Assembly (NCBI GenBank): GCA_965285935.1
Contig: OZ260664.1
Coordinates: 53,506,001 to 53,570,000, forward strand
Length of the DNA: 64,000 nt
Source: Ophelia neglecta
Taxonomy: Eukaryota
Direction: 5' to 3'
The notes under the pieces are model-generated. The model saw nothing but the letters and a program-made list of their open reading frames with translations, had not been told where the DNA came from and did not search any database. A program made the translations under genes and the position numbers. Shown in pieces: positions 37,437 to 64,000 of the stretch (position 1 is the stretch's first letter; every line of letters begins with the position of its first letter).

Positions 37437-40400
37437 ATGGCAGCAACGCAATCGTCGGAACTACCACCAGAGGTGAGCTCATTATTATCACTAGATCAGA
37501 TATTAAATGGTAACAACCAGCTGAGCCCCGGTTTCTTTAGTATTTAGTATCACAGATATTCACTAGTCGAATACAAAAGCCCATATATACTTCGTAGCTG
37601 GATTGCCCCCCCCCCCCTCCCTCCCCCCATGGGCCATCATCTGATCTCGAAAACCTGTCACGAGTAGTTTATCACCTCCACTAATTAAAAAGAATTACAG
37701 CCCTATTTTATAAATCTAATATTTTATGTACTACCACATACTAAATAGTAAATGCTTTATATTAGTTGTATCAAAAGCAGAATAGTAGCCTATAAGATAG
37801 TACAGAAAATATATGTATAAGGAAAAAAATGGGACTTACTTAATTTTTAAGTGGTGGAAGTGATAAAAAATCGTTTGAAAGCTTTCTATGACCAAAATAT
37901 GATATATTATGGAAGCTTTTTACAGATGCTATGGTATTCAACTGTTTTATAAATTTTTCATAATCATATATTATATAATGCTGTCAATTCTCTTCTAGCT
38001 GCCCAGGTTGTCTCTGTGAGCGATTGATTGGTTCATCGTGGATCATGGAATGACATATTATTTATTAAACTGTTCTCTTTTGTTGTTAATTATGCAGCCT
38101 TGTTTAATTACATTTTTTTATAGAATATTTAGCATTAGTTGCGATAAAAGGCTAAAAGATATAAAATCCTACATTTTATTATTCACCCCTAAATTGGGTC
38201 AAATTTCAATTTAAATCAAATTTGGAAACTTAGAATTGAATGTGTAGTTGTGCTTGTGATTTTAGAATTCAACCAAATAAAAAAGTCAAGTTTTACAGAA
38301 TGTTATGATTTTTTGTTACCATGAAAACCTAATGAGAATGGCGGTTATGCATATATATACTGCCCAACAAGTCAACACTGTCAGTATCACTACAACAAGT
38401 TCTTAATTGAATAATAGAACATAGACTGGGTTTGTCAATACTACAGCGTCGACATTAGTGGTTGGATTGCCTGACTGCCAGGGGCAAGGAAAAATTTAAG
38501 TTGGGCAAGTGAATAACAGCTTCAGTTACATACATGTGTAATATGTCAGCAATGCCCTAACATTAAGTTATGGGCAAGTAGTTTTTAAAAGATATGTCAG
38601 GCCCTGCATTATTAACTGGTATGATGTCTACTGCACTGAGCAGTTCAAATCTGACCAAATTATGTCCATTCATGTGCCAAAACTGAACTTATCATTTCCC
38701 CCAAGGTTTACGTACCGGTAATATCATTTCCCAACTTTTGCATACCAGTCAGTTATTTCAAAGAACATGGGCATAGTTCTCAATTATGCAAGTTTTTTTT
38801 TAAATGAAAAATTTCAGTTTGGAACAAATTTTGTTCATTGCACCAAACTGCAGGCAAAGTATGGTGTTCTCTTTATTGTGCAAGAAGTACCATGTATTCC
38901 AAAGAATTAACAGGCGTCCTGGCCAAATTACATTGATCGATTCACCATCTAAATAAATATATGGAAACAAGCAGTGAAAGCGGTGATTAGTATATGTTTC
39001 TTGTTAGCAAAGCTCATCTTCTGCAGAAGCTTCGAGAATTGGAGGAATGGCATGCTTCAGGTTTCTTTCACTTTTGCCTATGTTAAATCTGTACATACTG
39101 TTTTATTTAAAAGTAAATCAATAAAGTTGAAAAATTGACAGTTTTGGTTTTGATTTGTTGTACATAGGAAGTTGGTTACATACCTGACAAAGTAGTCAAA
39201 GCAGAGAGGAGAATTGCAAATCAACCCTATGACACAGAAGCATGGAGTGTGCTCATCAGAGATGCCCAGGTATTTGGAATATTACTGTAACAGTAAAAAT
39301 GTTCGCGTGATTTTAATTTGCAAATTTTGAGTAAAAGCACACGGTCGAAAAATTGTATTCACAAAAATTTTATTCTCATTTATATTTACTGCCTACCTAT
39401 ATTTTGGTGTGAACTTCAAATCAGACATTGTCTTATTTGGTAAAAACGCAAACGTTCTTCCCAAAACAATATACGATAGGCTTATATGAAAAACATGATT
39501 ATATGATTTTGAAAGTAAATACAAAATTTTAATTGATCTTGTTACTCTAAGCATTTATATGTTGACAAAAAGTAATAAGAAGTTTAGTGACTGGACTTGT
39601 TGCTTTGTATGCAAAATCTATCTATGCACATATAAAATAACTGAACTGTTCTGTCGCTGCATTTACAGGGGAAATTAATTGTATGTCACTTTTCGTTTTG
39701 CAGATGAAGGATATTGAAGATGCACGATCAGTCTACGAGAGGCTTGTGAGTCAGTTCCCAAACGCAGGACGCTACTGGAAGATCTACATTGAACATGAGG
39801 TTTTACAATTTTGTTTTATGTTAGGTGACAGTAATTAAATAGATACTTGGGAGCATGATTGTGTAGGGAATAAATTTATTTTGTGGTTTGAAGAAGAAAA
39901 TCATCTAAATTCAGAAAACCCTACAATCAAGTTAACAAGTATTTTCAAAAATAAAATTAGCTGAATTGCATCAGAAGTTTTAAGTGATAGTAGACCTACC
40001 ATATTCCTTTCATAAATGGCCTAGAATCTAAATGCACTTTTTACTTAGAATTGCTAAGTTCAAGTTGTATTTTGTAATATATTTTGTAATGTTCTTGCCA
40101 TAATTATCAAATCACAAATAATGAGCACAAGTTTTCTGTTGGTTTCTATGAAATGTACTTTGAAAACTTGTGTAAGGTGTTTCATATATAAACACCAATT
40201 TACAAAGATCTGACTTTGTTGCCTTTTTGATTGTGTTGGTGTTTTTCATCTGTGTTTGTGTTATTTGATTCTACAAAAAACAGTGTACATGTACGAGGTC
40301 AACGCATTAGTTTACTACAGTAAATATATGCATTAAATTGATATGGTTAACACACCCCCCACCCCACCCCCAGTCCAAAAGCTATCATGGTATTGTGGTG

Positions 40401-43400
40401 TTTATATAAGAGGATTATAATGACATAAACCTTTCAAGCATTGTTTACTTAATTAATACATTTATTTGACAGGGTTTAAATGGTTAGATGACTTTTTTTG
40501 CTACACTTTTCAACACTGCCAATTGTAACACACTTTTAGGTCAGGTCAAAGATTACTGGAAATACTGAATTTCTGCAATGGAATTAAAACATGCTATTCT
40601 TTAATGGAGCATATTCATCTAGTGCGATTTATTGGGGATATGAAAATCAAAGTTTGGTGTAGGGCTTCATTCCAATATGCAAGAAACAGAATACAGAAAT
40701 GGTAAAAATGTTTGTGCAGGATAAAATTAATGCACAAATTGAAACTACACTACTTTTTAATTTCTTGGCGAGAGATCTGTAGGATCTACATGCATATAGC
40801 TATGTACATGGTAATAAGATATTCACATTTCTAATCTTATCCTTTTTTTTTTTGCACATTTATCCCATTTTTACCATTACAACTTTTGTGTACACTGTGA
40901 ATACAAGTGTGAATGGGTATTTTGAATGCACACCAAAAATGTCCTGATAGAGTGATTTGTATGAATATGAGCTGCCTGTCTGAACGTGTGCATGAGTCTA
41001 TTTTACGCTTAGCATATTTTTGCCTTATCACCATATTGTTTATTCCTTGAGAAACAAATTCATGTAGAACTGGGATGATGGCCCCATGTTACAATCAACC
41101 AATGGACATTATTGGTTTTCATTGAATCACAGTAAATAGAGTAAGGTACCCACATACCTTTGTTGAATGATAAAAAAAACCATTGTCATTTTTTTTCCAT
41201 TTTTAGAATATGCCAAAATCAGAACTTGGGCTTGTTTCTAAGCTGCCTTTGAACATATATAGATGCATCGCAGTAGAAATTTTAAGTAATCAATGAATTA
41301 CTTTGTAGTTCAACTTTTTAACATGACACTTAGATCTTGGATTACTAATGAGATGCTTTAGAAATGTAAGTGCTGTGAATTCAGTAGTGTTTCCAGATTT
41401 GACTTCGACCTACAAGGCCAAGGTTAAAATAACTGAAATCGTGATTTTGGCCATAATTATAAGAAAAAGAAGCTAGAATAACATTGGAAGCACACAGTAT
41501 ACAACATCTTGAACATCGTATTGGGTTCTCAAATCCCATCTTAGTGTGAATTTTCAGTATTTTACACATGTGCATGTGTTCACTGACATTGGAATAGATT
41601 AGTATAGCTCTAGATTCTCAGTGTTTGGCAAAAGGTTAAGCATGGACATGCACATACCAGAGAACAATCAGCTAGCTCTATAGCATCATACAAAACACTG
41701 AAACTGAAACAGTCTCACTTCCCTTTTTTGATTGTGTATACTGATATATACTTCTAGGCAATGGAACCTGCCATTACTTTAACACTGTAAAGCCCTATAA
41801 TCTTGTTGTCCTTAATGTTTGCAGTGTTGGAACACAAATAGTTTTGCTATGCTAGTTTTTTTCTTTGTACTATTATCGGTGAAAGTCTACTATTATATTC
41901 ATGTAGGGTTTTGATGTGTATCCAATCCATCAGCCTACGACAGCCACCTACAAAGTGAATTCTCCTATGTGAATTATCATCTTTTAAGTTTTAACATGTT
42001 AATTCTTTATGTGATGACAAAGTGGACACCACTTTGATTCCATTCAAACAATTCTACTACTGTTGGCCAGGTGCCACGGGTAGCGAAATGTCACACGCTA
42101 GGCCAGGGGTAGCTAAGTCACATCCTAGGCCAGGGGTAGCTAAATGTCACATGCTAGGCCAGGGGTAGCTAAATGTCACATCATAGGCCAGGGGTAGCTA
42201 AATGTCACATCATAGGCCAGGGGTAGCTAAATGTCACATCATAGGCCAGGGGTAGCTGTATGTCACACCATAGGCCAGGTGCCAGGGGTAGCTAAATGAG
42301 TTATGGTTCACACTGACACCTCATTGTAATACTAGTATAAAAAAAAAACACAAACTACCACCCAGGTAAAACTACCCAGGTATAAAATAAGTTTACTTTG
42401 ACTCTTGTATGTTTTTGGGAAAAAAAGCTGAAGATATCAGGAAAGATTTATAGACTTTATCCATCCTACTGAGCTTATAGGGGCAAAAACTAAGCTTGAG
42501 GGACACACCAAGGTTGAATAAATCATAATACTTTTCTATTTAATTCCATTATTATTTTGTAAAATTTAGTTTAACTGGAACATGCAAAAAATGCCATGCC
42601 AAAATGTTCACAACATTGCTACTAATTGTTCCCATAACTCAAGTTGCCATTATAAGAAGATTTTCTTGCACCCTATTCTGATAGATCTACAGGGTAGCAA
42701 GCTATCTATGGACAAACCATACCTGCATTTATCTGATCACTTGTATGCTTATGTTTCCTCTTGGAGGAAGCAAGGCACACTGGGTAATTAACCCTACACT
42801 AATGACAGTATAATCAATGGGCTGGTAATAAGCTGGATACCAGTTTCTGGCTGTATGATCAGGCTTGTTCTGAAGTTGTTGGCTTAACTCTGTGACAGAG
42901 ACACAGGGGGGTAAATTAGGGTGACAAGTAGGCTTATCTGTGTGGGATACATGCAGTTGTGAGGAATCAACCCTATTTCTTGAATTTCATTTGGTGGCAT
43001 GGCGAATAAAATATTGTACGCATCTTACATAAATATACATGCCTAACATTTCTGACCCCAGTATATCAATATAATTGATATTTGCAATACTCCAATAGCT
43101 TTATAAAGTTTTTAGTAATACAGTGTTATGTTAAAGTAGTAAAATCATTACAAACTCAACTGAACACTAGTGCTGCCATCTCTTGAATGAATTTTTGTTT
43201 GGTTTGTCTTCACTACTGTCAAAGGAGGTGTTACAGCAAAACAAGGCTTAAAAAGGCACTAGGTTTGTGTCTGATTTAACCTTTATGGATGATGATGCTG
43301 CAGGTGGGCGGTTTTTATTATTTTTCATTTTCACTTTTTTTTTTTTTAAGTAATCTTTTTTTTGTGCACTAATATAATTCAGGGCATTCTCCCAATTTTA

Positions 43401-46400
43401 TCCACTCTCAAAATGGCTTTCCAGCTGTTAAACTACAAGCTCATGCTGTCCTCTTGTCAGTCAGGTTAATTTCATGTAGCACATCTTGTGGACAGGAAGT
43501 AATAATATCATAGGCACTTTTTTTTAATTAAAATACTATTCAGTGATGTAATCACCACTTTTTTTTAAATTGAACATTCGCTTCAAAAACTGATGCACCT
43601 GCTCAGAAGAACCTAAATGGTCAACCAGGTTTACATCGAATTTAAATGTGACCTTGGCCTGGGATACATGTCACTATGATATATATACATTATTGGCTTA
43701 AACCATGCCCTGCCATCTCAAATAGCATAGTTATTTAAAATAATAAATTAAAATACACATAATTATGTAATTTTCCTGTTAAGCATCAACTTTCTATAAT
43801 ACGTTGAAAAACTTCTACAACATGAAGAAAATAACAAAGTTTGTGACCTTGGTCGTGTTTACAGTGTAAGGGAACCCGTAAGATTTTGGCAGTTCAGTCT
43901 ATGAGCCACTGTCTAGGAATTGTGCATTTATTTGTAAAATTTACAAACAAAAAGCTTGATTACAACATAATTTATGAACGAAATTATGGATTTGTAAACA
44001 ACCGAGGAACATGATTCATAAAATCTCCTCTGTTCTTGAAACAAACGTACAAGAAACCTACCAGTAAACATGCATTGTCCTTTGACTTAGAGAAACAAGT
44101 GTGTTGATGATGATGATTCCATTGTTTGGGTTAAACTTATCCACACATAAAAAAAAAAAACCAATGAACCTTTTAACCAAGTATTAAAATTATTTGTTTT
44201 AGCTTTTAACACGCAGGAAATCGGTCAATTTAATATTTGTTAATCCCTAACTTGCAAGAGAGCAGACTGTTAAGAGTGTCTGTTTACATTAAATAAAGGA
44301 CTTAAATTAAAATCTGGGCAGTATATTTTTTTACGGTTTACTTTTTTTAACCAGTGAACTAAGTACTTTTTAAATATAACCCTCCCATTTCCTTTTTTGG
44401 TTTGAAATTATGGGATAGACCTAATCCATTTAAGGTGGCATGGCATACATGCAATTCTAAATATCTTGTTTATCTTGTTCACTGCTGAATAACTTGATAA
44501 ATCTGTGTGTTCTGGGTAAAAAAACTCGGTTGTTAGCAGTTACTGAGTTAAGGTGTTCTTTGTTCCTTAGCCGACTGCATGATGGTAGTAGTGACCCTGT
44601 ACACCTTTGAACCAATGTACCAATTGTTAGTGGTTCATTGCATGAACATTTTGCAAGATTTAAAAATACACTACATTCAAAAGCAAGGTGTGACAAATTT
44701 TTAAAAATCCTTGTTTGGACTTTTGAGAGCTTGAGGATATTATATGATTTTTAATAGCATGACATGTTCATTTAAGGATAACTTTAAGGTACAATTTTAT
44801 TATTTTACTTAACTAATTTCAAACTCAAGATAACCATTTCAAAATGTTTACTTTCCACTTGGTTGATTTGTATTATAAAGTTGTTAAAAAATTAAAAGGA
44901 AACTGAATATAATTTGGATGTGTGTTGTCATCTTTGCATCTCTCCTTTAAGGCCCTTGACATGCTTTCTGACATGACCATTTGGTTGACCATTTGTGAGG
45001 TACTATACTGCCGAAATGAAAAAGGCGTGCCATCAGAGCATATATGTGATGATGCTGGAGACAGCCCTGCTTGGTTAAAAAAGTCTAAATTGGAAATAAT
45101 CAGAAAGAGTTAAATATAGGGGAGATTTATTAGCTGGTGTGGCAGAGCAGGCGAAACCCATAAATTGCACGGTCCTTGGCAAACGTTTTCACATATAACG
45201 AAATAACAGGTTTCGGTGAAAGTGATTAAATGGGTTGGAGATGAGTTAGATTCTTGATTATGGCAATAATTCTAGATCTAGGGTTAATACAATTTAGGCA
45301 AAATGACACTATCTTAGGATAATGTCAAATTCCCTCACCGATTGAGAAAACCTTAGCCTTCAACATTTTTCATATGTTAATTTCTACAGAAGTTGCTTAT
45401 TTGCAGATTCCAATTTATTATGAAAATATTCATTCAATAAATGAAAAGTTTGAAATATCTAAATCAGAAATAACAGATGTCCGCAATTTAGATTCAGAAG
45501 CAAGACATTCATCTATTTAAAGCAAAAAAAAATTCACAAGAAAAAATCAATACTCTAAAATAATTGTTTTTATTCTAAATAATGTTTAACCTCCTGGTAA
45601 TCATGGCCAACAAATAACAACACAACAGTGAACCACATTTAATCCTTCATAGCAGTAGGGTCAAGAACCTATGTAGCTTGGAGCAATTAGAACTTAGAAT
45701 ATACTCAAGGTTATTAATTTAAAATAGCAAAGTGCCTTTTTAAACATTTTTTAATTTTCTCTTTGCCAGGAATCTCATGGCTTGATCAAGGGATAAGGGT
45801 GCCATTTTGGGCTTGAAATCCATTCACTTCAGTAGCAGTTATTGCCATTGCTGAGTGTATGGTATGATACCAGACATTATGATATATAATGTAGTGTTAG
45901 GTAGTTTAGTATTTTTTGAAGGCTGATGGGGGGGGGGAGGGGCTTGAAGGCAGTAATCAATAAAATTGTGCCTAAAGGCCTGTGGTACATAAGCTGTGTA
46001 AATTGGTCATTTATTTTCTAATTCATTCACCAATCAGTATCAGTCCTATTAGTTTGTAAAACTAATCATCTTATTTAGTGGACATCAACTCAAACTATTT
46101 GCTTAGTATTGATTTTTTGTACATTGATATTCATTTACCATTATCCCAAAAAAAAATCATTTGTGATTATTAGTTACCCAATCTAGAATGACAGTCAAGG
46201 AAATTCTATTGATTTTCTTTAAATACTGAAGCCCAATTTGTTTGTTTCTCTCTGGAAATATACTAGAAGATGCTTTAGGAAAAAGGGTTTGAATTAGCAG
46301 ACATTGTATGATATGACATGCAGGTTTAATTGTATCCGGCATTGATGAGAATTAGCCTCTAGGTACACTTGCTTCCTGTATTCAGCATTGTGCTGTTTGG

Positions 46401-49400
46401 CGCTGCACTTTGGGAGAATATAAGACTAATCCTATCCTAACCCTGGTGACACCAGACTCTCAGTGCAGAGCCAGAGAAGCAGTGCCCAGTCATACAGAGC
46501 AGCGCTACAGCGCCGAATATAGAGACCCGGGTAAACTTCTTCCCCATAAACTTTCATGACAAAATAGCAGGTGTACGTTATTAACTAAACTTGAGTGTGT
46601 TTGATTAAGGCACTTAATCATGTTTATAAGAGTGCTCATCTGGACAATTCATTAATAATAAAAGAACGAGCGATATGAGTCCTCCTGAATTATGGGTAAG
46701 TAGTTCATATCCTCTTTGCCAAGATTGACATTCACTTCCTAAACCAAATCACACCTGATCAAAGTCAGTTAATTAGATTGTATCAGTCCAACACAATCAA
46801 GATTGCAAATAAAGCATGTTATACCCAGTGTGGCTTACAAAGTCTGTTTCCAAATGTTGTATTCTGTTCATAATATACATATATTTTTCATTGTGACTTT
46901 CAGATGAAAGCAAGGAACTATGAGAGAGTTGAAAAGGTGAGTATCCTTTATGGTTCTAGTAAATTTTTAGTCTTGTCTCCATTATATCATCACCCTTTTG
47001 CAGTATGAAACAAAAGCATGCTCAGCAAATATTTCTTGACATTCTAGTTAAGACCATGTAAATTCAACTAGTTCTGTCAGTTGAAGTTTGGTACTGAGGA
47101 TTTTAAGTCCAATAAAAGTCCGACTAAACATATAAATTAATTCCAGTGGGAGGTTCACAATTTTAGGCTAGAAGGTTCTAGACCTTAACATATACAGATA
47201 AAGATTGGTGACAAATAATTGAAGAAAACAAAACAAATATATATTAGATTGCTACCTTTCCCAAGAAAATGATATTTCGTATGTCTGTTTGACTTCTTGT
47301 TTTTAGGCACAGGCTTCCCAAATGGATTGTAAGTTATATCAATATATTGGTTTATAGTCCCTAGTTCCCTTGGGTCCTGCCAGTAGGAGCCACTCCATAT
47401 CTTCACTCAATGCAGGCATTCTTGCTTCCGCATGTAAACAAACCCATTTAAAACATCATGGCACCGGTTCCGATCGAGAAAATTTAGACAGGAAAGACCA
47501 TATCCTGGCTGCAAAATTTTGAACTTTCATTTTGCAGTTGTTCCAGAGATGTCTAATGAAAGTTTTGAACATAGACCTGTGGAAAACCTACCTACACTAC
47601 ATTAAAGAGACGAAGGGTAGCTTGCCATCATACAGGTAACCTAGAGGATGCATACAGCGTAAAGCACTGTGTAACATACTAAGTTAACTTATCTCTAGGA
47701 ACATTACAAAAAAGGTTTAATATTGCTTAAATTTGGCCATTAGGCCTCGTATTGGCTTAATATATCAAATTTGTCCCCCTATTAATCTAATAAATGTTAC
47801 TTTAATATTTAATAACCCTGTATTTATAACAGATAGTCTGTCCCCATTAATTGGGTCTTTCTAAAAAGCATATTACTGTTTGTATGAGGTGGGACATTGT
47901 ATATTGCCAACATTGATGGCCTTGACCTCTATCTCCAAGGATAATATGCACTGTGTCTTCTTGATTATTTCATTGGTTTATACTGGGGCTGACCAAATCT
48001 TTGAAAATGTGTTTGTGTAAATTTAATTTTTCATGTTTCATTTTAAACTATTGTACTGATATATCATCCTGATTTTTTTTTAGAGAAAAGATGGCCCAGG
48101 CATATGATTTTGCACTTGATAAAATAGGAATGGATATCATGTCTTATCAGATTTGGATGGATTATATCAACTTTTTAAAATCAGTGTAAGTTGCTAATTC
48201 AGATAGATTGGACCAGTAGCTTTCTAAAAAAATCTTCTTGAAATGTTTGGCTTCTAAAAAAAGTGAACTAGATTATTATATTATTAAAGTAAGCTATATG
48301 TTGCCAGAGTAATATTTATATATTATAACATGTCTTAGAGCTCTTGTTTCTTATTACAAACTTAACCTTTTACAGAGAGGCTGTTGGGTCGTATGCAGAG
48401 AACCAGCGTATCACGGCAGTCAGGAAGGTGTACCAGCGTGGAGTCATTAACCCCATGATAAACATCGAACTTCTATGGAAGGAATACTGCACATTTGAAA
48501 ATGTAATCTTCTAGCTTCATATGAATATTTAGACTTTGACCCCTGCTTGAAGGTCAAATTTGGCGCATTCCTGCACGTTATCAAGTGGATTAAACAAAAC
48601 GATTGAGTTTATGGTTATCAAACTTGACATGCCTTTAAAGCGTTCCAACACCGCGAATAGTATTGTATTTCGGCTAAATCCAAAAAAGAGGGTCTTCATA
48701 ATGTAATAAGTGTGTTAAGTGTCCATCCATCTTGAAAATACTGTTTAAAGACTTACAGATATATTAACCTCATTTAATCAAATTTGATGGCACAAGGGAA
48801 ATTGGCGTCATTGCCACATCTTGTTCAAGTCTAAAAAAGTCTAATTAACTCTAAAAATGAGCAATCCTCTTTATAAAATTTGGCCTTACCAGGGGGAATA
48901 AATTTGACTGAAAATAAGTACTCAAGAAACATGATGCAACAAAGAGTCAGAGTCAAATAATCCTACTTGTAATTGTTGTGGCATATGCAACAGATTAATC
49001 TGAGCCCTGGATACCCAGACGGTCTTGTCCAGTGATAATCATAACCATGCTCTGTACATTGTAGAATATTAACCCCCTCATTGCCAAGAAGATGCAGGAA
49101 GACAGAGGCAGGGATTACATGAATGCTAGGAGAGTGGCCAAGGAATATGAGGTGGTTACAAAAGGGTTAAATAGAAACTCGCCTTCTGTACCCCCTGCCA
49201 ACTCTCCTGATGAGGCGAAACAGGTAACAAGTTAAATTTAATTCTATGCACCTACCAATAATATTCTTTTTTTTGTAGAACTTTATTTAATTTAACATAT
49301 ATTAATTGCAACCTATGTGTAAGCAAAGGCTGATTGGACAGTCAATTCAGAATAGATCTTTTATATTATATTCAGGTGGACCTCTGGAAAAAATACATTT

Positions 49401-52400
49401 TGTGGGAGAAAAATAATCCTCTGAGGACCGAAGACCCTGCTACAATAACTAAAAGAGGTAAATATAATGTACTCTTCTCACCATACCTGTACACTTCAGA
49501 TATAAACCAGTAAATTTAAACTTGACTATTGACAAGAATTCTTTTCCAATGAGTAGTAGGAAGTAACAGTACATTCAAAAGTGCATACACGAAAACTACA
49601 CAGTTAAAATATTAATAGTCTTTCAGCCCAGTTAAAATATTAATAGTCTTTTAGCCCTAAAACTTGTTATATGACTTCGATTTGAGTCTTTGTTCTCTCC
49701 ATAGAAATGAAGAATTGATGTACTTTAATAAATGATAGTAGTAAGTTTGTGTGTTTGCTTCTTTCCAGTGATGTTTGCCTATGAACAGTGTCTGTTGTGT
49801 CTCGGTCACCACCCAGATATCTGGATTGAAGCAGCATCCTACCTAGAACAGTCCAGTAAACTTCTGGCTGAGAAAGGCGTAAGCATAACTTAATATGCTT
49901 TTCTAGGTTATTGGAAATAAATATTCCCCAGGTTATCGGGTTGATTAATAGATTATGATTGATAAATTATTGACATTTTAAGTACTGTGTTTGTCATTTT
50001 TAGGACCAGAATGCTGGAAAGCTGTTTGCTGATGAGGCAGCGGCAATGTATGAACGTGCCGTCACCAGTCTGCTGAAAAATAACATGCTCATCTACTTTG
50101 CCTATGCAGATTTTGAGGAGGTATGAAAAACTGTAATACTATATGAGTTTTTTGCAATTTATTAATTGTTTATTGAATAATTCGATACATGGTCCCTAAT
50201 GATTAAAATTGTCCATATTTAAATGATTGTTTTGGTTCTGTAGAGTCGAATGAAGCATGAGAAGGTTCACAGCATATACAAGAGACTGATGCAACTTGAA
50301 GATATAGATCCGTCGCTGGTAGGTAACAATAATTTAGGGGATCTAAATACACATAATTTCTACATCTTTGATAACATTCATTAAAATTCTGGAGAGAAAG
50401 TGTGTCGAAGATTTCAGCATCATGCAATATTTAAAAATACTTATATATGGTCATGATTTTTTGTCTGCCTAGTTTATGCTGGGAATACTTAGTACGAAGT
50501 ATTCAAGTGCTGTTTTTTCAGGCTTATGTGCAATACATGAAGTTTGCCCGTCGAGCAGAGGGCATTAAATCTGCACGTAATGTGTTCAAGCTGGCTCGGG
50601 AAGACCCTAGGAGTCAGTACCATGTCTTTATTGCAGCAGCCATGATGGAGTATTACAACAGTAAGGTAAGTCTGTCACCCAAATGGCAATTTAAAATGCC
50701 AGGCAATGTAATACTCCCGGCAGTGTTAATCACCTGGCAATTTAAAACTCCTTGCAATGTAAAATACCTGGCTATGTAAAACCTATGGAGTACAAGGTTT
50801 TTATAAGTTCAAAGCAAATGCATGTAGTTAGAGTCCATGTTCCTCTTGCCTAGAAGTGAAGGATAGCCCTTCAATTCAAATGAAAAAATCCCAAAATATC
50901 TAAACACTATTAGACTACCAATTTTTGTATTTATACCTGTTTTGATTTGTTTTGTAGGATAGAAATATTGCTTTGAAGATATTTGAATTGGGGTTAAAGA
51001 AGTATGGGCAGCATCCAGAATACATCCTAGCCTATGTTGACTACATGTCTCATATAAATGGTAAGCTTGAAGAATGCCTTCCCCTGGGGAATGCCATACT
51101 CTGCACCTAGAGGGTTTTCATGAAAACATCAAAAGTTAATTAAAATATTCGGTTCAAAAACCTGAGGGACCCCAGGGAATGACGCTCTGGGTCATACATT
51201 TATTTTTAAAATATTATTGTTTACTTATGTTTATTTATTTCACCAGAGGACAACAACACAAGAGTCCTGTTCGAGAGGGTCCTGTCATCAGGACAGTTAG
51301 AGGGAGACAAAACCCAGTAAGTAGTATTTTACTCTAGTCATATCAACTCTCAACCAGGTATTTGGTTAATTTCTTGTATATAAAGCATGGTTTTTTACAG
51401 TATAAGAATTCATTCCAAAACAATTTGCAATTGTGTATTTTTGACTACCTAAATAAAATACTATATTTTAAGACTATTTTGCTTTAATTGCTTTTCGTTT
51501 GGTAATTATACTACAGACAAACAGTGGATGGAGGTATGTGTGTATTTATATTTTTGGAATGTTATCATATGGAGAGATAAAGCAAGTTCTTAATGTTCTT
51601 CTACAGTGAAGTGTGGAACAAGTTTTTAGAGTTCGAGTCCAATGTGGGGGATCTGGCCAGTATATTGAAAGTGGAAAGGAGAAGAGCTCAGGTCATAGGA
51701 AATGTGAGTCCCATCTTAGCTTAAAATATATTGACAAAAAGATTATTTATGGAGACTTTGATATATTATATTTATAGTTTCAGTTATAAAATGCATATTT
51801 TGAACAAATATGGGGCCAACTTATGTATGACAATTGTTGCATATTGTATAAAATTAGTTGCAAGAGAATGAATAAATAATAAATAATTCAGATTAGAATG
51901 TTTATAACATACTGATTATTTTGTAAGTACCCATGTTTTTTTTTTAATAATAGGAGTTTGAAGGCAAGGAGACAGCTTTGTTAATAGACAGATACAGATA
52001 CTGTGATCTGTTCCCATGTTCCACAATAGAACTCAAATCACTTGGATATCGGGTATGTAGGCTCAACTCATGTCCATGATCTTTTACTAGCCTTTATGCT
52101 TTTCTATCCTTCTTTCCCTTTACAATCTATTTGCTGCTGTAAGAATGTTTAAAAGTATGTACGTGTGGCAATGTATTAGTTGGCAATGATTTGAATATTG
52201 AGACTCCAAATATTGCTCTTAGTGAAATTACTACCCTTCAGGATAATCTAGACAAATCAGATTATTTTTGACTAGTTTCTTGAGTTTAAAGTAAGTTATG
52301 TCGTAACTGTTTGTATTGTAGGATCTTGCCAAGGCCTTGGGAGGGTCAGTGCCCTTATTGTTACAGCTAGGAGACTCGGTGAGAAGTGCAGCAGAAGAAG

Positions 52401-53491
52401 AGGAACAGAAGACATCTCGGCCAAAATACCCGATGCCAGATACAGCCCAGATGATACCCTTCAAGCCTAGGGTCATTGTCCGTAAGCATGTTTTCGTAAT
52501 ATATTTTATCAAAACTTATGTATTGGAGATGAAAGGGCCATTATGGAGACATTTTGCCAATCAAAACAGGAGCTCAACAGGGAAAAAGGAAACCAAAGGG
52601 ATCTAAATGAATGGGAAGCACTTTTATATGATATGATTTACACATGCTCAAAACACTGATTTGATTGATACTACTTTACAGCCACTGATGCACATCCCAT
52701 CCCGGGAGGAACCTTTCCTCCACCCCCAGCTGCATCAGAACTACTAACTAAACTGCCACCACCAACATCATTCCAGGTAAACTCTAGAAATTGTGGTTCA
52801 TTCTGTGTATATGAATGTTTCAATGTTCTTACTTTATTGAAATTTGTATGGAAATTTTTGCTTTTGCTTTGAGGCTGAATGTTGCAATCTAATTATTTAT
52901 TAAAATTCATCATTGAGGAGAATTATACAGGCCTTTGACATCTCATTAAAAAACTTTTTCTTTAGGAATTAGATATTTTAATGTAGTATCTCACATATAT
53001 ATCTGATATACATGTACCGGTTTCATTTCAGGGACCTTTCCTACAGATCGACAAGTTCATAGAACACTTGCAGAGATTGAGACTGCCTGATGGTAAAGAA
53101 AATATATTATTACTTTGAATTAAATAATAAGTACTTGTACCAACAGCACTTGCCAGTTATTCTGTGGGAGATTAAATATGTTCTGTTAAAAATGAATATT
53201 CCACTGATACCTTTATGATTTTTCATTAATAGCTTTTATATTTTCTCCAGCATAACTTGTTTTGGACTTCTGATTAACATGTATTCTGTTATTATCTCAG
53301 AGCCCCCTAAGATGGAGAATGGCTTTGATGGACGTGTTGACCCAGGCACACAGTACTCCATGGACATAGCCATGGGCAGGAAACGAAAACAGATGGAGTC
53401 CGAAAACGCGGAAAGTGATGATGAAGACACCTTGGCTGTGCCACCTGCACATGACCTATACAGGGCAAGACAGCAGAAAAAAGTCAGATAG
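37437..53491 (+). CDS. CSTF3: Cleavage stimulation factor 77 kDa subunit (CstF-77 / suppressor of forked), 21 coding exons, 718 aa
   Basis: Manually spliced GT-AG exons: 37437-37472, 39168-39269, 39704-39799, 46904-46936, 47538-47635, 48084-48185, 48376-48502, 49065-49223, 49376-49457, 49769-49878, 50004-50120, 50244-50318, 50522-50665, 50958-51060, 51247-51316, 51607-51703, 51954-52052, 52322-52481, 52682-52776, 53032-53092, 53301-53491. Total 2157 nt with consistent phases. The peptide has CstF-77 HAT-repeat segments ([86 protein letters not shown]), the Pro-rich [11 protein letters not shown] / GGTFPPPP region and the C-terminal [16 protein letters not shown]. Confidence 0.97.
39800..40270 (+). 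promoter_or_regulatory. Weak intron-3 5' splice site and candidate intronic polyadenylation signals of CSTF3
   Basis: Donor is GAG|GTTTTA. Read-through adds [12 protein letters not shown] (stop 39836-39838). Hexamers: ATTAAA 39834, AATAAA 39869 and 39950, and TATAAA 40187 followed by a U/GU-rich tract at ~40215-40270. This is the intron position of the known vertebrate CSTF3 intronic poly(A) site. Confidence 0.65.
42065..42298. repeat. 29-bp minisatellite, ~7.5 copies, in CSTF3 intron 3
   Basis: Unit AGGCCAGGGGTAGCTAAATGTCACATCAT in tandem. Confidence 0.95.
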
Positions 53492-59570: not shown

Positions 59571-62500
59571 TGTGTTTAGAGAATACTACAATTTTATACT
59601 ATGTCTTGCCTGTAGTGACAATATGTGTTCCTCTTATACCTTTGCATGTAGTATTTGAGTAGATTGTTAGAATAGACTATCTGTTGTGCTTACATCTATT
59701 TCCTTTGTGTTACAGATTGAGTGTGATCATTGTCTCTAATGGAAATAAAGCACAAAGAGTAGTCTAGTACTTATTTATGATCACACTCTCTACCTGATCT
59801 CTGCAAACCTTCTCAGTCCTCACCTTAGTGACTGACTCTAACTCCTCTACCACTAATTCACCATGCCACAGGTCGGATGTCCATTCCCTGACTGTGAATA
59901 TGAGACTGACGATGTCTCAGAAACAGTGGTCGTCGCACTGCTCAACCTCCATGCCAAAAGTCACGAGCCCCCAGTCCCACCGCGACAGGCTGAGGCAGCA
60001 GTGAAGGCAGAGAAAGTGAAGCGCCCAACTGTGTCCACTGCAGGCACAAATGAGGAATGGACTTATTTCCTCACACGATGGAAGGAGTACAAAGATGCCA
60101 CTAAGGTCACTGGCAAGGACAAACTCATTCAGCTATTGGAATGTTGTGATGAACCTTTACGAAAGGACCTCACACGCTCAGTTGGTGGCAGCCTCACTGA
60201 CAAGAGTGAGGATGACGTTCTTGCTGCAATCAAAAAACTTGCTGTACGAGAAGAGAATGCCATGGTGGCTAGAGTTATCCTGCATGACATGAGGCAGGAC
60301 AAAGATGAAGCAATACGGTCATTTGGTGCCAGGATTCGCGGCCAAGCAGGAGTGTGTAAGTTCACCGTGGACTGCCCCAGATGCCAAGCAAATGTGGACT
60401 ACACAGACTGCATCTTGCGAGATGTGTTATCCCGTGGACTTGCGGATCCTGAAATCCAGCTGGACCTTCTTGGTGACTCTAATCAGGACAGGACACTAGA
60501 GGAGGTTTTCCAGTTCATTTATTCAAAGGAAGCAGGCAAACGTTCAGCCTCACGCCTACATGACTCTCAAGGGGCCCAGGCAGCTGCCAGTTCATATCGA
60601 CATGCCAAAAAACAGACTGCTACAAGACCAGACACTGATGTATGTACATATTGTGGCAAGAAAGGGCATGGCATTAGGGCACCCCCTCGTACCCGTAAAT
60701 CTGAATGTTCAGCATACAATCATACATGTGCACACTGTGGCATAAAGCACCACCTCGAGAGTGTTTGCCGCAGTAGGGACAAGCCACAGAAACCACGCAC
60801 ACCAGCAGCAGCTAACAGAGGTCAGTCTGCGCTTCTGGAATGCGAGGGTGCCGCCTCTGACACATGTGAGGGTGCCACCTTCAATACACTCTGCACAGTG
60901 ACTGCAGCCAGCAACCAACAGGGTGGACAATCACTCATGATCGAGCACCATGTGTACAACCAACTTTGTGACATGTGGATGCGCCAGGGCTCAAGACCTC
61001 AGCCTTTTATTCAGGTCAGATGCACTGTGCGCCCAGAAGACTACACTGCCCTAAGCTGTAAGCTAGACAGGCAAACTGGATCAGCCACCCTCTCCGTTAT
61101 GGCCGATACTGGCTGCCAGAGCTGCCTCGCAGGTTTAGATGCCATCCGGTATCTTGGCCTATCGCGCAAGGATCTCATCCCAGTCACTATGAGAATGCAT
61201 GCCGCCAACAATGCTGGTATTAATATCCTGGGCGCAGTGATTCTTCGATTCTCAGGGAAGGTTGCATCTGGCAAAATGTTGGAGACCCGTCAGTTGGTAT
61301 ACATCACGGATAGCTCGGACAAAGTCTTTCTCAGTCGAGAGGCATGTTCTGACCTAGGAATGATACCACTTGACTTCCCAAAAGTCGGTGGGGCCTTAAG
61401 AGTCAGCTCCATACCTTCAGGCTCCAAGCAAGGTACCCAGAACTCACAGGTTACTGTTAGCCCCAACCAACTCGAGAAGCTCTTGGCCACTGACAATGGT
61501 CTGACAGCCCCATGTGACTGCCCGCGGCGCCAACTCCCACCTCCACCGCCCACTTCACTCCCCTTCGCACCAACAGAAGGAAACAGGGCGAAACTCCAGC
61601 AATGGCTGGTAGACTATTACAGATCCAGCACATTTAACATGTGTGAGCATCAACCCCCACCAATGAGACTCATGGTGGATCCCAGTGCCACACCAGTCAC
61701 TCATCACAAGCCTCTCCCAGTCCCCCTACACTGGCGGGATGAGATCAAGGCAGGACTGGACCAGGATGTCAGACTGGGAGTGATCGAACCTGTACCCATT
61801 GGGGAGCCAGCCACCTGGTGTCACCGCATGGTTGTGTGTGCCAAGAAAAATGGCAAGCCACGCAGAACTGTTGACCTTCAGGCACTCAACCTCCATGCAA
61901 CACGTGAGACACACCATACTCAGTCTCCATTCCACCAGGCTAGGTCGGTACCACATCATACCAAAAAGACCGTGTTTTATGCCTGGAATGGTTATCACAG
62001 TGTGCCAATACATGAGGATGATCGCCACCTCACAACCTTCATCACCCCATGGGGCAGATACAGGTACCGTACTGCACCACAAGGCTACATTGCATCTGGT
62101 GATGGCTACACACGTCGCTATGATGAAATCATTGCCCATATACCACAGAAAACTAAATGTGTCGATGACTCCTTGCTATGGTCAAACACTACAGAAGAGA
62201 GCTTCTGGCAGGCAGTCAACTGGCTTGATCTCTGTGGTCGGAACGGCATCACCTTCAATGTGGAGAAGTTTGTCTTTGCTGCGGACACTGTTGAATTTGC
62301 TGGCTTCGAGATCACCCTTGACAGTGTACGCCCCTGTAGCAGGTACCTTCAGGCTATCCTAGACTTCCCAACACCCAAGAACATCACAGATGTCCGTTCA
62401 TGGTTTGGGTTGGTCAATCAAGTCTCTTATGCCTTCAGCATGGCAGGCAGAATGCTGCCTTTCCGACAGCTTCTTAAACCTGGCACACCATTCCATTGGT

Positions 62501-64000
62501 CTGAAGAACTCGACAGTGCCTTCGAAGAATCAAAGCACGCCATTGTGAGTGAGATTGAGGAAGGTGTTCAAATATATGACAAGCGCAGACCCACCTGCAT
62601 TGCCACAGATTGGGCCAAGACTGGCATCGGCTTCTGGTTGTTCCAGAAGCACTGCGATTGTCCAGGTACCAAACCATTTTGCTGTCGAGATGGCTGGAAA
62701 ATAACACTTGTAGGCAGCCGATTCACACATTCCGCGGAATCCCGCTATGCACCCATTGAGGGAGAAGCCCTTGCTGTTGCCTATGCTCTGGATAATGCTC
62801 GCTTCTTTGTCCTGGGCTGCAATGACCTCATCCTTGCAGTAGACCATAAGCCTTTGCTCAAGGTCTTTGGAAACCGTTCACTTGATGAGATAGCCAACGG
62901 CCGCCTGAGAAACCTCAAGGAAAAAACCCTGCGCTATAAGTTTCGCATTGTGCACATCCCTGGCGCAAAACACAAAGCAGCCGATGCCGTGTCCAGACAC
63001 CCAACAGGCTCAGAGTTACCCGAGAAATTACATCTGGAGGATGACATTGCATCTATCTGGGCTTCATTCGACCTGTTCCCCATGAATGAATTCCGCCACT
63101 CATTCTTGGGAGGGATTCGAGTAACAGACTGCACCAGTTACCCCAGCAATGTAGATGATGAAGTCAGAGGCTCTGCTTTATCTGCCCTGGACTCGCTGCA
63201 GTCTGTAACCTGGGACCAAGTGCGATTAGGAACAGCAAGTGATGAAAATATGAACCTGCTCCTGTCTATTATTGAAGCTGGTATGCCACAATTCCGCCAC
63301 GAGCTCCCTGCACCACTACGTGAATATCACCAGCTCAGGGAGCACCTGTACACGTCGGATGGAGTCATTCTTTATAAGGACCGTGTTGTCATCCCCCCGA
63401 GCCTTCGTGAAGCCATCCTGTCAGCACTCCATTCTGCTCACCAGGGGGTCACAGCGATGACAGCACGGGCAGAGTCCTCTGTCTTCTGGCCAGGCATCAC
63501 CCAAGCTATCAATTCGACCCGACTGAACTGTACCCACTGTAACCGTATGGCTCCCTCTCAGCCTAGTGCTCCACCAACCCCACCTGTCCTCCCGGCCTAC
63601 CCATTTCAGTGCATATGTGCAGACTTTTTCACCTACAGAGGTGTCAACTACCTCGTGATGGTTGACAGATACTCCAACTGGCCTATCGTGGAGAGAACAA
63701 CAGGTGGTGCCAAGGCCCTCGTTGACAGCCTGCGTCGTACCTTTGCCACATATGGCATACCTGATGAACTCGCCTCCGATGGTGGCCCTGAGTTCACTTC
63801 CACCCAGACTAGGCAGTTTCTCAAGGACTGGGGTGTGCACCATAGGCTCTCCTCTGTTGCTTTCCCCCACAGTAACTGTCGTGCTGAGGTGGGCGTTAAG
63901 ACAGTGAAGAGAATGATCACTGATAACACTGGACCCAATGGAGAGCTGGACACGGACGCTGTGCAACTTGCCATCCTCCAATATCGGAACACACCTGATC
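59571..64000 (+). mobile_element. Ty3/Gypsy LTR retrotransposon inserted antisense in an EMC7 intron; 3' part outside the window
   Basis: Composition shifts abruptly to GC-richer coding sequence with domain order gag-PR-RT-RH-IN. An upstream LTR-like segment has AATAAA at 59744-59749. The exact left boundary is uncertain (TG starts at 59571, 59611 or 59722) because the 3' LTR is not visible. Confidence 0.93.
59863..64000 (+). CDS. Single-frame Gag-Pol polyprotein, at least 1379 codons, open to the window end
   Basis: Read codon by codon with no stop; it is probably absent from the ORF track because it does not terminate. Motifs: Gag CCHC knuckles (CTYCGKKGH-x12-[15 protein letters not shown]), protease MADTGCQSC (~61099-61125), RT APQGY and CVDD (62158-62169), RNase [10 protein letters not shown] / VDHKPL / ADAVSR, integrase HSAH..CTHC and ICADFF / SDGGPEF / SNCRAE. 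Confidence 0.95.

What the first reader, a model, noticed from the sequence alone, without database searches (positions are those of the whole stretch)
39800..46903. CSTF3 intron 3 looks like a multi-layer autoregulatory module: weak donor, intronic poly(A), structured RNA domains and candidate poison exons
Seen: intron 3 is 7.1 kb, while introns 4-20 are all about 600 bp or less. It has a non-consensus donor (GTTTTA) and, apart from one minisatellite, little obvious TE debris. It holds at least four multi-helix fold-back domains and two exon-like segments with in-frame or frameshift stops. Established: vertebrate CSTF3 intron 3 and Drosophila su(f) use an intronic poly(A) site for negative feedback on CstF-77 level, with a weak 5' splice site and a large intron in vertebrates. 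Inference: this lineage may add an RNA-structure and poison-exon layer that I do not recognise as described.
Basis: partly seen in the sequence, partly recalled or inferred. Interest (0 to 1): 0.82.

Follow-up and report, generated by a model that had tools for sequence, protein, structure and literature searches.

The report
Conserved weak-donor long intron in CSTF3

Summary
Anatomy confirmed. CSTF3 has 21 exons here. Intron 3 (39800-46903) is 7,104 nt, 44% of the coding span; introns 4-20 are 123-601 nt. Its donor GAG|GTTTTA is the weakest of 20.

The arrangement matches the known vertebrate intron-3 module. The intron position is the same. GAG|GTT holds in all 11 non-vertebrate lineages I could read and in the published vertebrate alignment (GAG|GTTAAT). 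Intron 3 is also outsized in relatives: about 16 kb in a scallop and 1.9 kb in the compact annelid Dimorphilus, whose other introns are at most about 355 nt. RNA contigs from molluscs and unnamed relatives carry exons 1-3 spliced and then run 0.6-1.9 kb into intron 3.

The added layers fail:
- Fold z-scores match controls and the antisense strand.
- The named stem-loop at 46376-46530 is a MITE copy.
- The domain at 44938-45126 has z -1.75.
- Exon-like segments occur at chance frequency.
- No island is conserved with relatives.

One feature stands out: a 106-nt hairpin at +41..+146 beside a textbook-looking ATTAAA/GU-rich site (z -5.3). It is unproven.

The poly(A) site and the feedback are therefore inferred. 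Earlier scan notes on this gene were on this window only.

The parts
37437..53491 (+). CSTF3 (CstF-77) coding span, 21 exons, 718 codons
   Evidence: Splice-site and frame analysis. The exon-3 ORF hits proteins named cleavage stimulation factor subunit 3, Pfam Suf PF05843.
39704..39799 (+). Exon 3 (32 codons, ends in phase 0 after ...YIEHE)
   Evidence: Aligns to exon 3 of relatives and vertebrates.
39797..39805 (+). Weak 5' splice site GAG|GTTTTA, with U at +3
   Evidence: Weakest of 20 donors. GAG|GTT is shared by 11 non-vertebrate lineages and by the vertebrate alignment.
39800..46903 (+). Intron 3, 7,104 nt, 44% of the coding span
   Evidence: Mostly single-copy in the genome. No Rfam family, no tRNA, and one ORF of at least 70 aa (a 79-aa TTG-started ORF on the minus strand).
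39800..39835 (+). Read-through extension of the exon-3 frame: 12 codons, then TAA at 39833-39835. Predicted 90-codon ORF.
   Evidence: Relatives' read-through ORFs stop after 2-41 codons.
39834..39839 (+). Candidate poly(A) signal ATTAAA at +35. CA lies 15 nt downstream at 39854-39855.
   Evidence: downstream-element score at the 91st percentile of 295 hexamers in the window. Use in vivo not tested.
39856..39890 (+). GU-rich then U/GU-rich tract (UGAUUGUGUAGGG ... UUUAUUUUGUGGUUUG), with AATAAA at 39869-39874 inside it
   Evidence: Read from the sequence. Resembles the vertebrate AUUAAA plus U-rich/GUGU layout.
39840..39945 (+). 106-nt hairpin at +41..+146. Its 5' arm contains the GU-rich tract. 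A further AATAAA follows at 39950-39955.
   Evidence: MFE -30.7 against -15.2 +/- 2.9 kcal/mol for shuffles, z -5.28, 0 of 200 shuffles as good; antisense z -3.49. Second-lowest GC-adjusted energy of 3,973 windows. Single-copy.
41204..41556 (.). Dispersed repeat family copy
   Evidence: At least 12 scored matches at 69-74% identity elsewhere in the genome.
42073..42279 (.). Minisatellite, 29 nt x 7.2 copies
42513..42870 (.). Low-copy repeat with inverted-repeat character
   Evidence: Low fold z on both strands.
44938..45126 (+).
   Evidence: z -1.75, 12 of 200 shuffles as good; antisense z +0.27. Single-copy.
46375..46530 (.). MITE copy (about 156 nt in this copy, terminal inverted repeats CTGTATTC[A/G]GCGCTG).
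   Evidence: 27 of the 40 scored non-self matches at 73-85% identity; counts are lower bounds, with 123 first-look candidates for the whole intron. Alignment of 9 copies has sharp ends and unrelated flanks. z -2.46 sense, -1.49 antisense.
46879..46903 (+). 3' splice site of intron 3. Pyrimidine count 15 of 20; range in the gene is 12-16.
46904..46936 (+). Exon 4, a 33-nt micro-exon with strong donor AAG|GTGAGT
   Evidence: An orthologous 33-nt exon was found in Argopecten and Dimorphilus.

Best explanation
Intron 3 of this invertebrate CSTF3 gene is the orthologue of vertebrate CSTF3 intron 3. The closest named relatives are molluscs and an annelid. Selection appears to keep the intron long and its donor very weak (GAG|GUU).

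Proposed mechanism: removal of the intron is slow, so it competes with premature 3' end formation, or with persistence of the unspliced intron. That yields a short RNA with exons 1-3 and a 90-codon ORF that stops 12 codons into the intron. The yield of full-length CstF-77 mRNA then falls when cleavage/polyadenylation activity is high or U1 activity is low.

Shown here: the anatomy, its conservation across phyla, and read-through transcripts in relatives.
Inferred: use of a poly(A) site in this species (best candidate ATTAAA at +35 with CA and a GU/U-rich tract) and the feedback itself.
For: Gene model and donor:
- 21 exons as in human; intron 3 is 44% of the coding span, against 43% of the gene in human.
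- The donor is the weakest of 20.
- The intron position is the same as in vertebrates: after ...YIE-x-E in phase 0, followed by the 33-nt exon.
- GAG|GTT holds in window, L002, L003, Tegillarca, Argopecten, Dimorphilus, two octopods, Trichonephila, L037 and L038, while +4..+6 vary freely. None of the other 19 donors of this gene has T at +3.

Intron 3 size in relatives:
- More than 10 kb in Tegillarca, 15,994 nt in Argopecten, more than 10 kb in a spider.
- 1,906 nt in Dimorphilus, about a third of that gene's ATG-to-stop span; its other introns are 0 to about 355 nt by exon mapping.

Transcripts in relatives: RNA-derived contigs have introns 1 and 2 removed and 0.6-1.9 kb of intron 3 attached. 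They come from 2 JGI samples, a Tegillarca run, contigs from at least 24 runs for one octopod protein and 13 for another, and 2 further runs.

The vertebrate mechanism (weak 5'SS, intron length and a suboptimal AUUAAA site giving feedback) is experimentally established.
Against:
- No contig from any relative ends in a poly(A) tail. The shared contig ends are (TA)n assembly breaks. Read-through RNA could therefore be slowly spliced or detained pre-mRNA.
- Canonical hexamers are not enriched in the intron: 2.8 per kb against 2.5 per kb background. Five of 20 have downstream scores at or above the 91st percentile, so the +35 site is not singled out.
- Relatives' contigs read past their first hexamers.
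- The vertebrate pA core sequence is absent.
Confidence: 0.55

Rival explanations
1. Detained or slowly spliced intron without polyadenylation. The weak donor and the length make intron 3 a rate-limiting splice. Unspliced RNA is held in the nucleus or degraded (the read-through frame stops after 12 codons). Output is tuned by U1/splicing activity, not by CstF.
For: Read-through contigs in relatives run 0.6-1.9 kb past several hexamers and show no poly(A) tails. One relative's RNA contig joins exon 3 directly to exon 6, which suggests error-prone splicing around the micro-exon. In vertebrates U1 level dominates the use of this intron.
Against: The orthologous vertebrate intron works through a mapped poly(A) site. 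Assembled contigs cannot show 3' ends, so the missing tails are weak evidence.
Confidence: 0.2
2. One reading: besides the weak donor and the poly(A) site, several structured RNA domains and poison exons inside intron 3 regulate the gene.
For: One strong hairpin lies at +41..+146 (z -5.28). The first ~430 nt of intron 3 fold somewhat better than interior control segments across 11 lineages: median residual -2.59 against -1.76, one-sided p 0.013, in a post-hoc test. A spider has a sense-specific hairpin at +51..+156 (z -3.66).
Against: - Intron-wide z-scores equal controls and the antisense strand.
- The named domains have z -1.75 and -2.46, and the latter is a MITE present in many copies.
- Pseudo-exons are at or below chance density, and one lies in a repeat.
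- There is no Rfam match.
- No conserved island is shared with any relative.
- The -40..+150 region of relatives has z between -1.0 and +1.5.
Confidence: 0.07
3. Neutral architecture: the intron is long and its donor poor by drift, and the read-through RNAs are noise.
For: Intron interiors do not align between relatives. No function has been tested in any invertebrate.
Against: - T at +3 is invariant in 11 lineages plus vertebrates, while +4..+6 are saturated.
- Intron 3 stays about 5-fold larger than any other intron in the miniaturised Dimorphilus gene, where several introns have been lost.
- About 85% of the intron here is not recognisable repeat.
Confidence: 0.1

Closest known systems
Vertebrate CSTF3 (CstF-77) intron-3 poly(A) autoregulatory module (Luo et al. 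2013, PMC3708835, and the earlier report of the site that it cites)
   Same: 21-exon gene. Same intron position. Intron 3 is about 43-44% of the gene. Large intron 1 and small intron 2. Donor GAG|GUU with U at +3. The read-through ORF soon hits a stop. An A(U/A)UAAA hexamer with GU/U-rich tracts lies near the donor.
   Different: Intron 3 is 7.1 kb against 33 kb. The candidate signal is at +35, against about +225. The vertebrate pA-flanking sequence, including its hairpin next to AUUAAA, is not present. Usage and feedback are untested here. That paper treats the site as vertebrate-conserved and its resemblance to fly as convergent.
Drosophila su(f) intronic poly(A) autoregulation
   Same: The same protein family limits its own mRNA by premature 3' end formation in an intron.
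   Different: The fly site is reported to share no surrounding sequence or adjacent exon/intron structure with the vertebrate site, and its short RNA lacks an in-frame stop. The window follows the vertebrate layout.
IgM heavy-chain composite terminal exon (secreted vs membrane switch)
   Same: Competition between a weak 5' splice site in a sizeable intron and an intronic poly(A) site sensitive to CstF level.
   Different: IgM makes two functional proteins. Here the short form is a 90-codon N-terminal stub, presumably non-functional.
Poison-exon autoregulation of splicing factors (SR proteins; own knowledge)
   Different: Such cassettes are typically highly conserved. No conserved or above-chance exon-like segment was found in this intron.

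Membership tests
Vertebrate-type CSTF3 intron-3 autoregulatory module | Intron at the homologous position (phase 0 after ...YIE-x-E, before the 33-nt exon) | tested here: met
Vertebrate-type CSTF3 intron-3 autoregulatory module | Intron 3 disproportionately large within the gene | tested here: met
   7,104 nt, 44% of the coding span; the next largest are 1,695 and 601 nt. Also large in Argopecten, Tegillarca, Dimorphilus and Trichonephila.
Vertebrate-type CSTF3 intron-3 autoregulatory module | Very weak 5' splice site | tested here: met
   GAG|GTTTTA, PWM -1.6, the lowest of 20. It shares GAG|GTT with the vertebrate GAG|GTTAAT. MaxEnt was not available; a simple PWM built from my own approximate frequencies was used.
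Vertebrate-type CSTF3 intron-3 autoregulatory module | Strong 3' splice site | tested here: inconclusive
   Pyrimidine count 15 of 20, near the top of the gene's range of 12-16. No calibrated score.
Vertebrate-type CSTF3 intron-3 autoregulatory module | Intronic poly(A) site of medium strength that is used in vivo | not testable with these tools
   Sequence candidates exist (ATTAAA +35, CA +55, GU/U-rich tract).
Vertebrate-type CSTF3 intron-3 autoregulatory module | Short RNA isoform with exons 1-3 plus intron-3 sequence | tested here: inconclusive
   Found in relatives: L002, L003, L005, L008-L027, L037, L038. Not testable for this species. 3' ends are not visible in contigs.
Vertebrate-type CSTF3 intron-3 autoregulatory module | Sequence conservation of the pA-flanking elements with vertebrates | tested here: not met
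   The vertebrate PAS core has no match in the intron at up to 3 mismatches. Intron interiors do not align even among lophotrochozoans.
Vertebrate-type CSTF3 intron-3 autoregulatory module | Negative feedback by CstF-77 / cleavage-polyadenylation activity and by U1 snRNP | not testable with these tools
   Requires knock-down or reporter experiments.
Poison-exon (NMD cassette) autoregulation | Cassette with usable splice sites, a premature stop and junction reads, usually conserved | tested here: not met
   Pseudo-exon density of 0.42 per kb equals the antisense strand and is at or below controls. No conserved island. Junction reads were not testable.
Structured regulatory RNA domains | Folding beyond dinucleotide shuffles, strand-specific, with conservation or covariation | tested here: not met
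   For the intron as a whole and for the named domains. The exception is hairpin 39840-39945. Covariation was not testable because no close relative was available.

The most novel reading that the evidence does not exclude
The 106-nt hairpin at +41..+146 is a working part of the sensor. Its 5' arm holds the GU-rich downstream element of the ATTAAA(+35) site. CstF could therefore bind only in the interval before the 3' arm, 60-90 nt further on, is transcribed. That would make use of the site a kinetic read-out of CstF concentration. Comparable 5'-proximal hairpins in a spider and some molluscs would be analogues.
Probability: 0.12. Interest if true: 0.75.

Novelty: new member of a known kind. 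Interest (0 to 1): 0.5.

Why it matters
The vertebrate CstF-77 intron-3 switch is a textbook case of a 3'-end processing factor sensing its own activity. The literature I could search treats it as vertebrate-conserved and as convergent with the fly mechanism. No held paper describes it outside vertebrates and fly.

The same intron, the same odd GAG|GUU donor and the same outsized length occur in this genome, in molluscs, in an annelid and in a spider. That points to a module dating back at least to the common ancestor of protostomes and deuterostomes. It also offers small natural versions, such as the 1.9-kb intron in Dimorphilus, for experiments.

For this window the practical result is sobering. 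The proposed new RNA-structure and poison-exon layers mostly dissolve into a MITE, chance folds and chance splice-site pairs.

Tried and rejected
I replaced it with coordinate-based scripts.
- Joined protein: the joined spliced protein was not searched anywhere. Exons were searched separately. In one search the exons were concatenated inside a script only to count length, frame and stops.
- RNA families: no Rfam match and no tRNA in or near the intron.
- Nested gene: rejected. The only ORF of at least 70 aa is a 79-aa TTG ORF on the minus strand.
- TE inflation: rejected as the main cause of length. Only about 1.1 kb is repeat or minisatellite.
- Octopod contig ends: the common ends about 887 nt after the stop first looked like a poly(A) site. 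They are (TA)n assembly breaks. Two longer contigs end within 2 nt of each other, 15-18 nt after CATAAA and before a U/GU-rich tract. That is suggestive only.
- First-hexamer test: a hexamer lies within +239 in 9 of 11 lineages. This is marginal, about 0.03 by my rough binomial against the measured densities. I do not rely on it.
- Two fold scans timed out and were re-run at a smaller size.
- The Nezara protein was not on record.
- The organism could not be named. SRR12737824 is in no held paper.
Full report
**What is there**

The + strand of 37437-53491 encodes a CstF-77 (CSTF3) orthologue.
- I placed 21 exons from stop-free segments, splice-site scores and phase bookkeeping. Together they give 718 codons and one terminal stop.
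- The exon-3 ORF hits proteins named cleavage stimulation factor subunit 3, with Pfam Suf, at 82-86% identity.
- Exon 3 is 39704-39799 and exon 4 is a 33-nt micro-exon at 46904-46936. Intron 3 is therefore 39800-46903, 7,104 nt, or 44% of the ATG-to-stop span.
- Intron 1 is 1,695 nt, intron 2 is 434 nt, and introns 4-20 are 123-601 nt.
- The intron-3 donor GAG|GTTTTA scores -1.6 with a generic donor matrix. The other 19 donors score 2.6-12.2. It matches the U1-complementary consensus at 4 of 9 positions, and 57% of all GT dinucleotides in the gene region score as well.

Method notes: the exons were joined inside a script only to count frame and stops. The joined protein was not searched in any tool.

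**Content of the intron**

- There is one minisatellite of 29 nt x 7.2 copies at 42073-42279.
- Whole-assembly searches (762 Mb) find repeats only at four places: 41204-41556, 42513-42870, 46371-46530 (whose element core is 46375-46530) and a few stubs of about 50 nt. The stretch 43300-46370 is entirely single-copy at that sensitivity.
- There is no Rfam family and no tRNA. The only ORF of at least 70 aa is a 79-aa TTG-started one on the minus strand.

**Comparison with the known module**

Luo et al. 2013 (PMC3708835) describe human CSTF3 as follows:
- It has 21 exons, and intron 3 makes up 43% of the gene.
- Introns 1 and 3 are large and intron 2 is small.
- The intron-3 5' splice site sits at the 0.7th percentile of human introns.
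- There is a suboptimal AUUAAA site with U-rich and GUGU downstream elements.
- Experiments show that donor strength, intron length and site strength set the usage of the intronic site, with feedback from CstF-77 and control by U1.

Their Figure S1 gives the vertebrate boundary as GAG|GTTAAT, with the signal about 225 nt into the intron. The paper regards the site as vertebrate-conserved, sees the fly su(f) site as convergent, and found nothing similar in C. elegans. I found no held paper that extends the module to other invertebrates.

**Relatives**

A word search with the exon-3 ORF, then with a four-sequence profile, returned 216 short N-terminal CstF-77 proteins. The closest named ones are:
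- molluscs: Tegillarca, Octopus, Argopecten, Arion and Mytilus;
- the annelid Dimorphilus.

The host of this window is therefore probably a lophotrochozoan. I could not name it.

Many of these proteins run ...YIE-x-E and then V..., which means they read through the intron-3 donor. The vertebrate 103-aa isoform does the same.

I fetched the DNA or RNA contigs behind them. Eleven non-vertebrate lineages begin intron 3 with GAG|GTT:

| Lineage | Intron-3 donor |
|---|---|
| window | GTTTTA |
| L002 | GTTCAC |
| L003 | GTTTTG |
| Tegillarca | GTTAAT |
| Argopecten | GTTATA |
| Dimorphilus | GTTGGG |
| two octopods | GTTTAT |
| spider Trichonephila | GTTTTT |
| L037 | GTTTAT |
| L038 | GTTACT |

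Positions +4 to +6 vary freely, whereas T at +3 never changes. None of the other 19 donors of this gene has T at +3. T there is rare in donors generally (own knowledge).

Intron 3 size in relatives:
- Argopecten: 15,994 nt.
- Tegillarca and the spider: more than 10 kb.
- Dimorphilus: 1,906 nt. Its remaining introns are 0 to about 355 nt and several have been lost. The annotation there even splits the gene at this intron.

**Transcripts in relatives**

Many contigs have introns 1 and 2 removed yet continue 0.6-1.9 kb into intron 3:
- two JGI contigs (L002, L003);
- a Tegillarca run (L005);
- at least 24 contigs for one octopod protein and 13 for another;
- L037 and L038.

None ends in a poly(A) tail. 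The recurrent contig ends are (TA)n tracts, which are assembly breaks. These contigs show stable or abundant read-through RNA. They do not show where, or whether, it is polyadenylated.

One relative's RNA contig (L001) joins exon 3 straight to exon 6. That skips 131 nt and shifts the frame.

**Poly(A) candidates in the window**

- Reading through the donor gives 12 codons and a TAA at 39833-39835.
- That TAA overlaps ATTAAA (39834-39839).
- A CA lies 15 nt further on.
- Then come UGAUUGUGUAGGG and, after an AATAAA, UUUAUUUUGUGGUUUG.

This looks like a textbook site and echoes the vertebrate AUUAAA/U-rich/GUGU layout. The statistics are weak, however:
- Canonical hexamers occur at 2.8 per kb in the intron, against 2.5 per kb in the window.
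- The +35 site's downstream score is at the 91st percentile.
- Four other hexamers in the intron score as high or higher.
- The vertebrate core sequence itself is absent.

**The structure layer**

A 150-nt scan of the intron against dinucleotide shuffles gives these mean z-scores:
- sense strand: -0.16;
- antisense strand: -0.25;
- flanking non-coding controls: +0.08 (Mann-Whitney p 0.087).

The two domains with known coordinates do poorly:
- 44938-45126 has z -1.75, with 12 of 200 shuffles as good.
- 46376-46530 has z -2.46. It is a copy of a MITE, about 156 nt here, with terminal inverted repeats CTGTATTC[A/G]GCGCTG. Copies have sharp ends and unrelated flanks, and 27 of the 40 scored non-self matches were to this family. 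Its hairpin belongs to the element, so the suggested ADAR-gated poison-exon acceptor rests on a mobile element.

One feature does stand out: a single long hairpin at 39840-39945, which is +41..+146 of the intron.
- Its energy is -30.7 kcal/mol, against -15.2 +/- 2.9 for shuffles. That is z -5.28, with 0 of 200 shuffles as good. The antisense strand has z -3.49.
- After correction for GC it is the second most stable of 3,973 windows on this strand.
- It is single-copy.
- Its 5' arm contains the GU-rich tract just described. ATTAAA sits immediately before it and another AATAAA immediately after.

In relatives the -40..+150 region is unremarkable, with z from -1.0 to +1.5. The best 106-nt window within the first ~430 nt tells a slightly different story:
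- It is somewhat more stable across the 11 lineages than in 52 interior control segments of the same introns. The medians are -2.59 and -1.76 SD, one-sided p 0.013. The test is post hoc and the two octopods are not independent.
- The spider has a sense-specific hairpin at +51..+156, with z -3.66 against -0.47 on the antisense strand.

I treat this as a lead, not a finding.

**The poison-exon layer**

- Acceptor/donor pairs 40-250 nt apart occur at 0.42 per kb on the sense strand. The antisense strand has the same density, and controls have 0.48-1.59 per kb. One of the three sense pairs lies in a repeat.
- blastn and tblastx find no island shared with the introns of any fetched relative.
- Junction reads could not be examined.

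**Verdict**

The anatomy is real, and it is the known CstF-77 intron-3 module in a new phylum-level setting. Its hallmark donor and relative length are conserved from lophotrochozoans and a chelicerate to vertebrates. That argues for an ancient origin, not a vertebrate invention.

The mechanism in this species is inferred. It would be competition between slow splicing at GAG|GUU and premature 3' end formation or detention, lowering full-length CstF-77 mRNA. I give it about 0.55. Detention without polyadenylation is the main rival.

Only the 5'-proximal hairpin deserves follow-up.

Noticed in passing
window 59857-63999 (+): Open frame of 1,381 codons running off the window end. It carries zinc-knuckle-like and polymerase/integrase-like motifs in a block of about 50% GC, against about 36% elsewhere. 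It looks like an LTR retrotransposon gag-pol just downstream of CSTF3. Described only.
   Followed up: no
window 46375-46530; copies L029-L036: MITE family, about 156 nt in the window copy, with terminal inverted repeats CTGTATTC[A/G]GCGCTG and an internal palindrome. 27 of the 40 scored non-self matches across several chromosomes were to it, and counts are lower bounds.
   Followed up: yes
window 39746: A strong-looking cryptic donor (CTT|GTGAGT, PWM 7.1) lies inside exon 3 in frame. Spliced to exon 4 it would remove 18 codons. The one relative I checked by eye (L003) lacks the GTGAGT, so it is probably a codon accident.
   Followed up: partly
L001:300-345: An RNA contig of an unnamed relative (Logan SRR12737824) joins exon 3 directly to exon 6. 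It skips the 33-nt exon 4 and exon 5 (131 nt), shifts the frame and gives a 77-aa ORF followed by a 592-aa ORF.
   Followed up: partly
P0012, P0044, P0048, P0051, P0055, P0063, P0094, P0118; L006: A second class of short CstF-77 models, in a scallop, insects and nematodes, includes the micro-exon 4 and then reads through the intron-4 donor. In Argopecten, exon 5 was not found within 10 kb after exon 4. Both introns flanking the micro-exon may matter, and this could bear on how the fly su(f) site relates to the vertebrate one.
   Followed up: no
L007:10001-15362: In Dimorphilus gyrociliatus the public annotation splits CSTF3 into an 85-aa and a 588-aa model at intron 3. Several downstream introns are lost while intron 3 stays at 1.9 kb.
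   Followed up: partly
Luo et al. 2013 Figure S1: In the vertebrate alignment an 8-bp inverted repeat (TTGTTGCA ... TGCAACAA) sits directly upstream of the conserved ATTAAA. Its stems are kept from mammals to fish while the loop varies. In the extracted text of the figure I saw labels only for exon/intron, 5'SS, stop codon, UGUA, PAS, pA and U-rich/GUGU elements, and none for this repeat.
   Followed up: no
L008, L010, L009 3' ends: Two octopod contigs end within 2 nt of each other, 15-18 nt after CATAAA. A third continues into a U/GU-rich tract. This may be an intronic poly(A) site about 1.8 kb into octopod intron 3.
   Followed up: partly
window 41204-41556: Copy of a dispersed repeat of about 350 nt, with at least 12 scored matches at 69-74% identity, many of them clustered on contig C5 near 113-115 Mb.
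   Followed up: no
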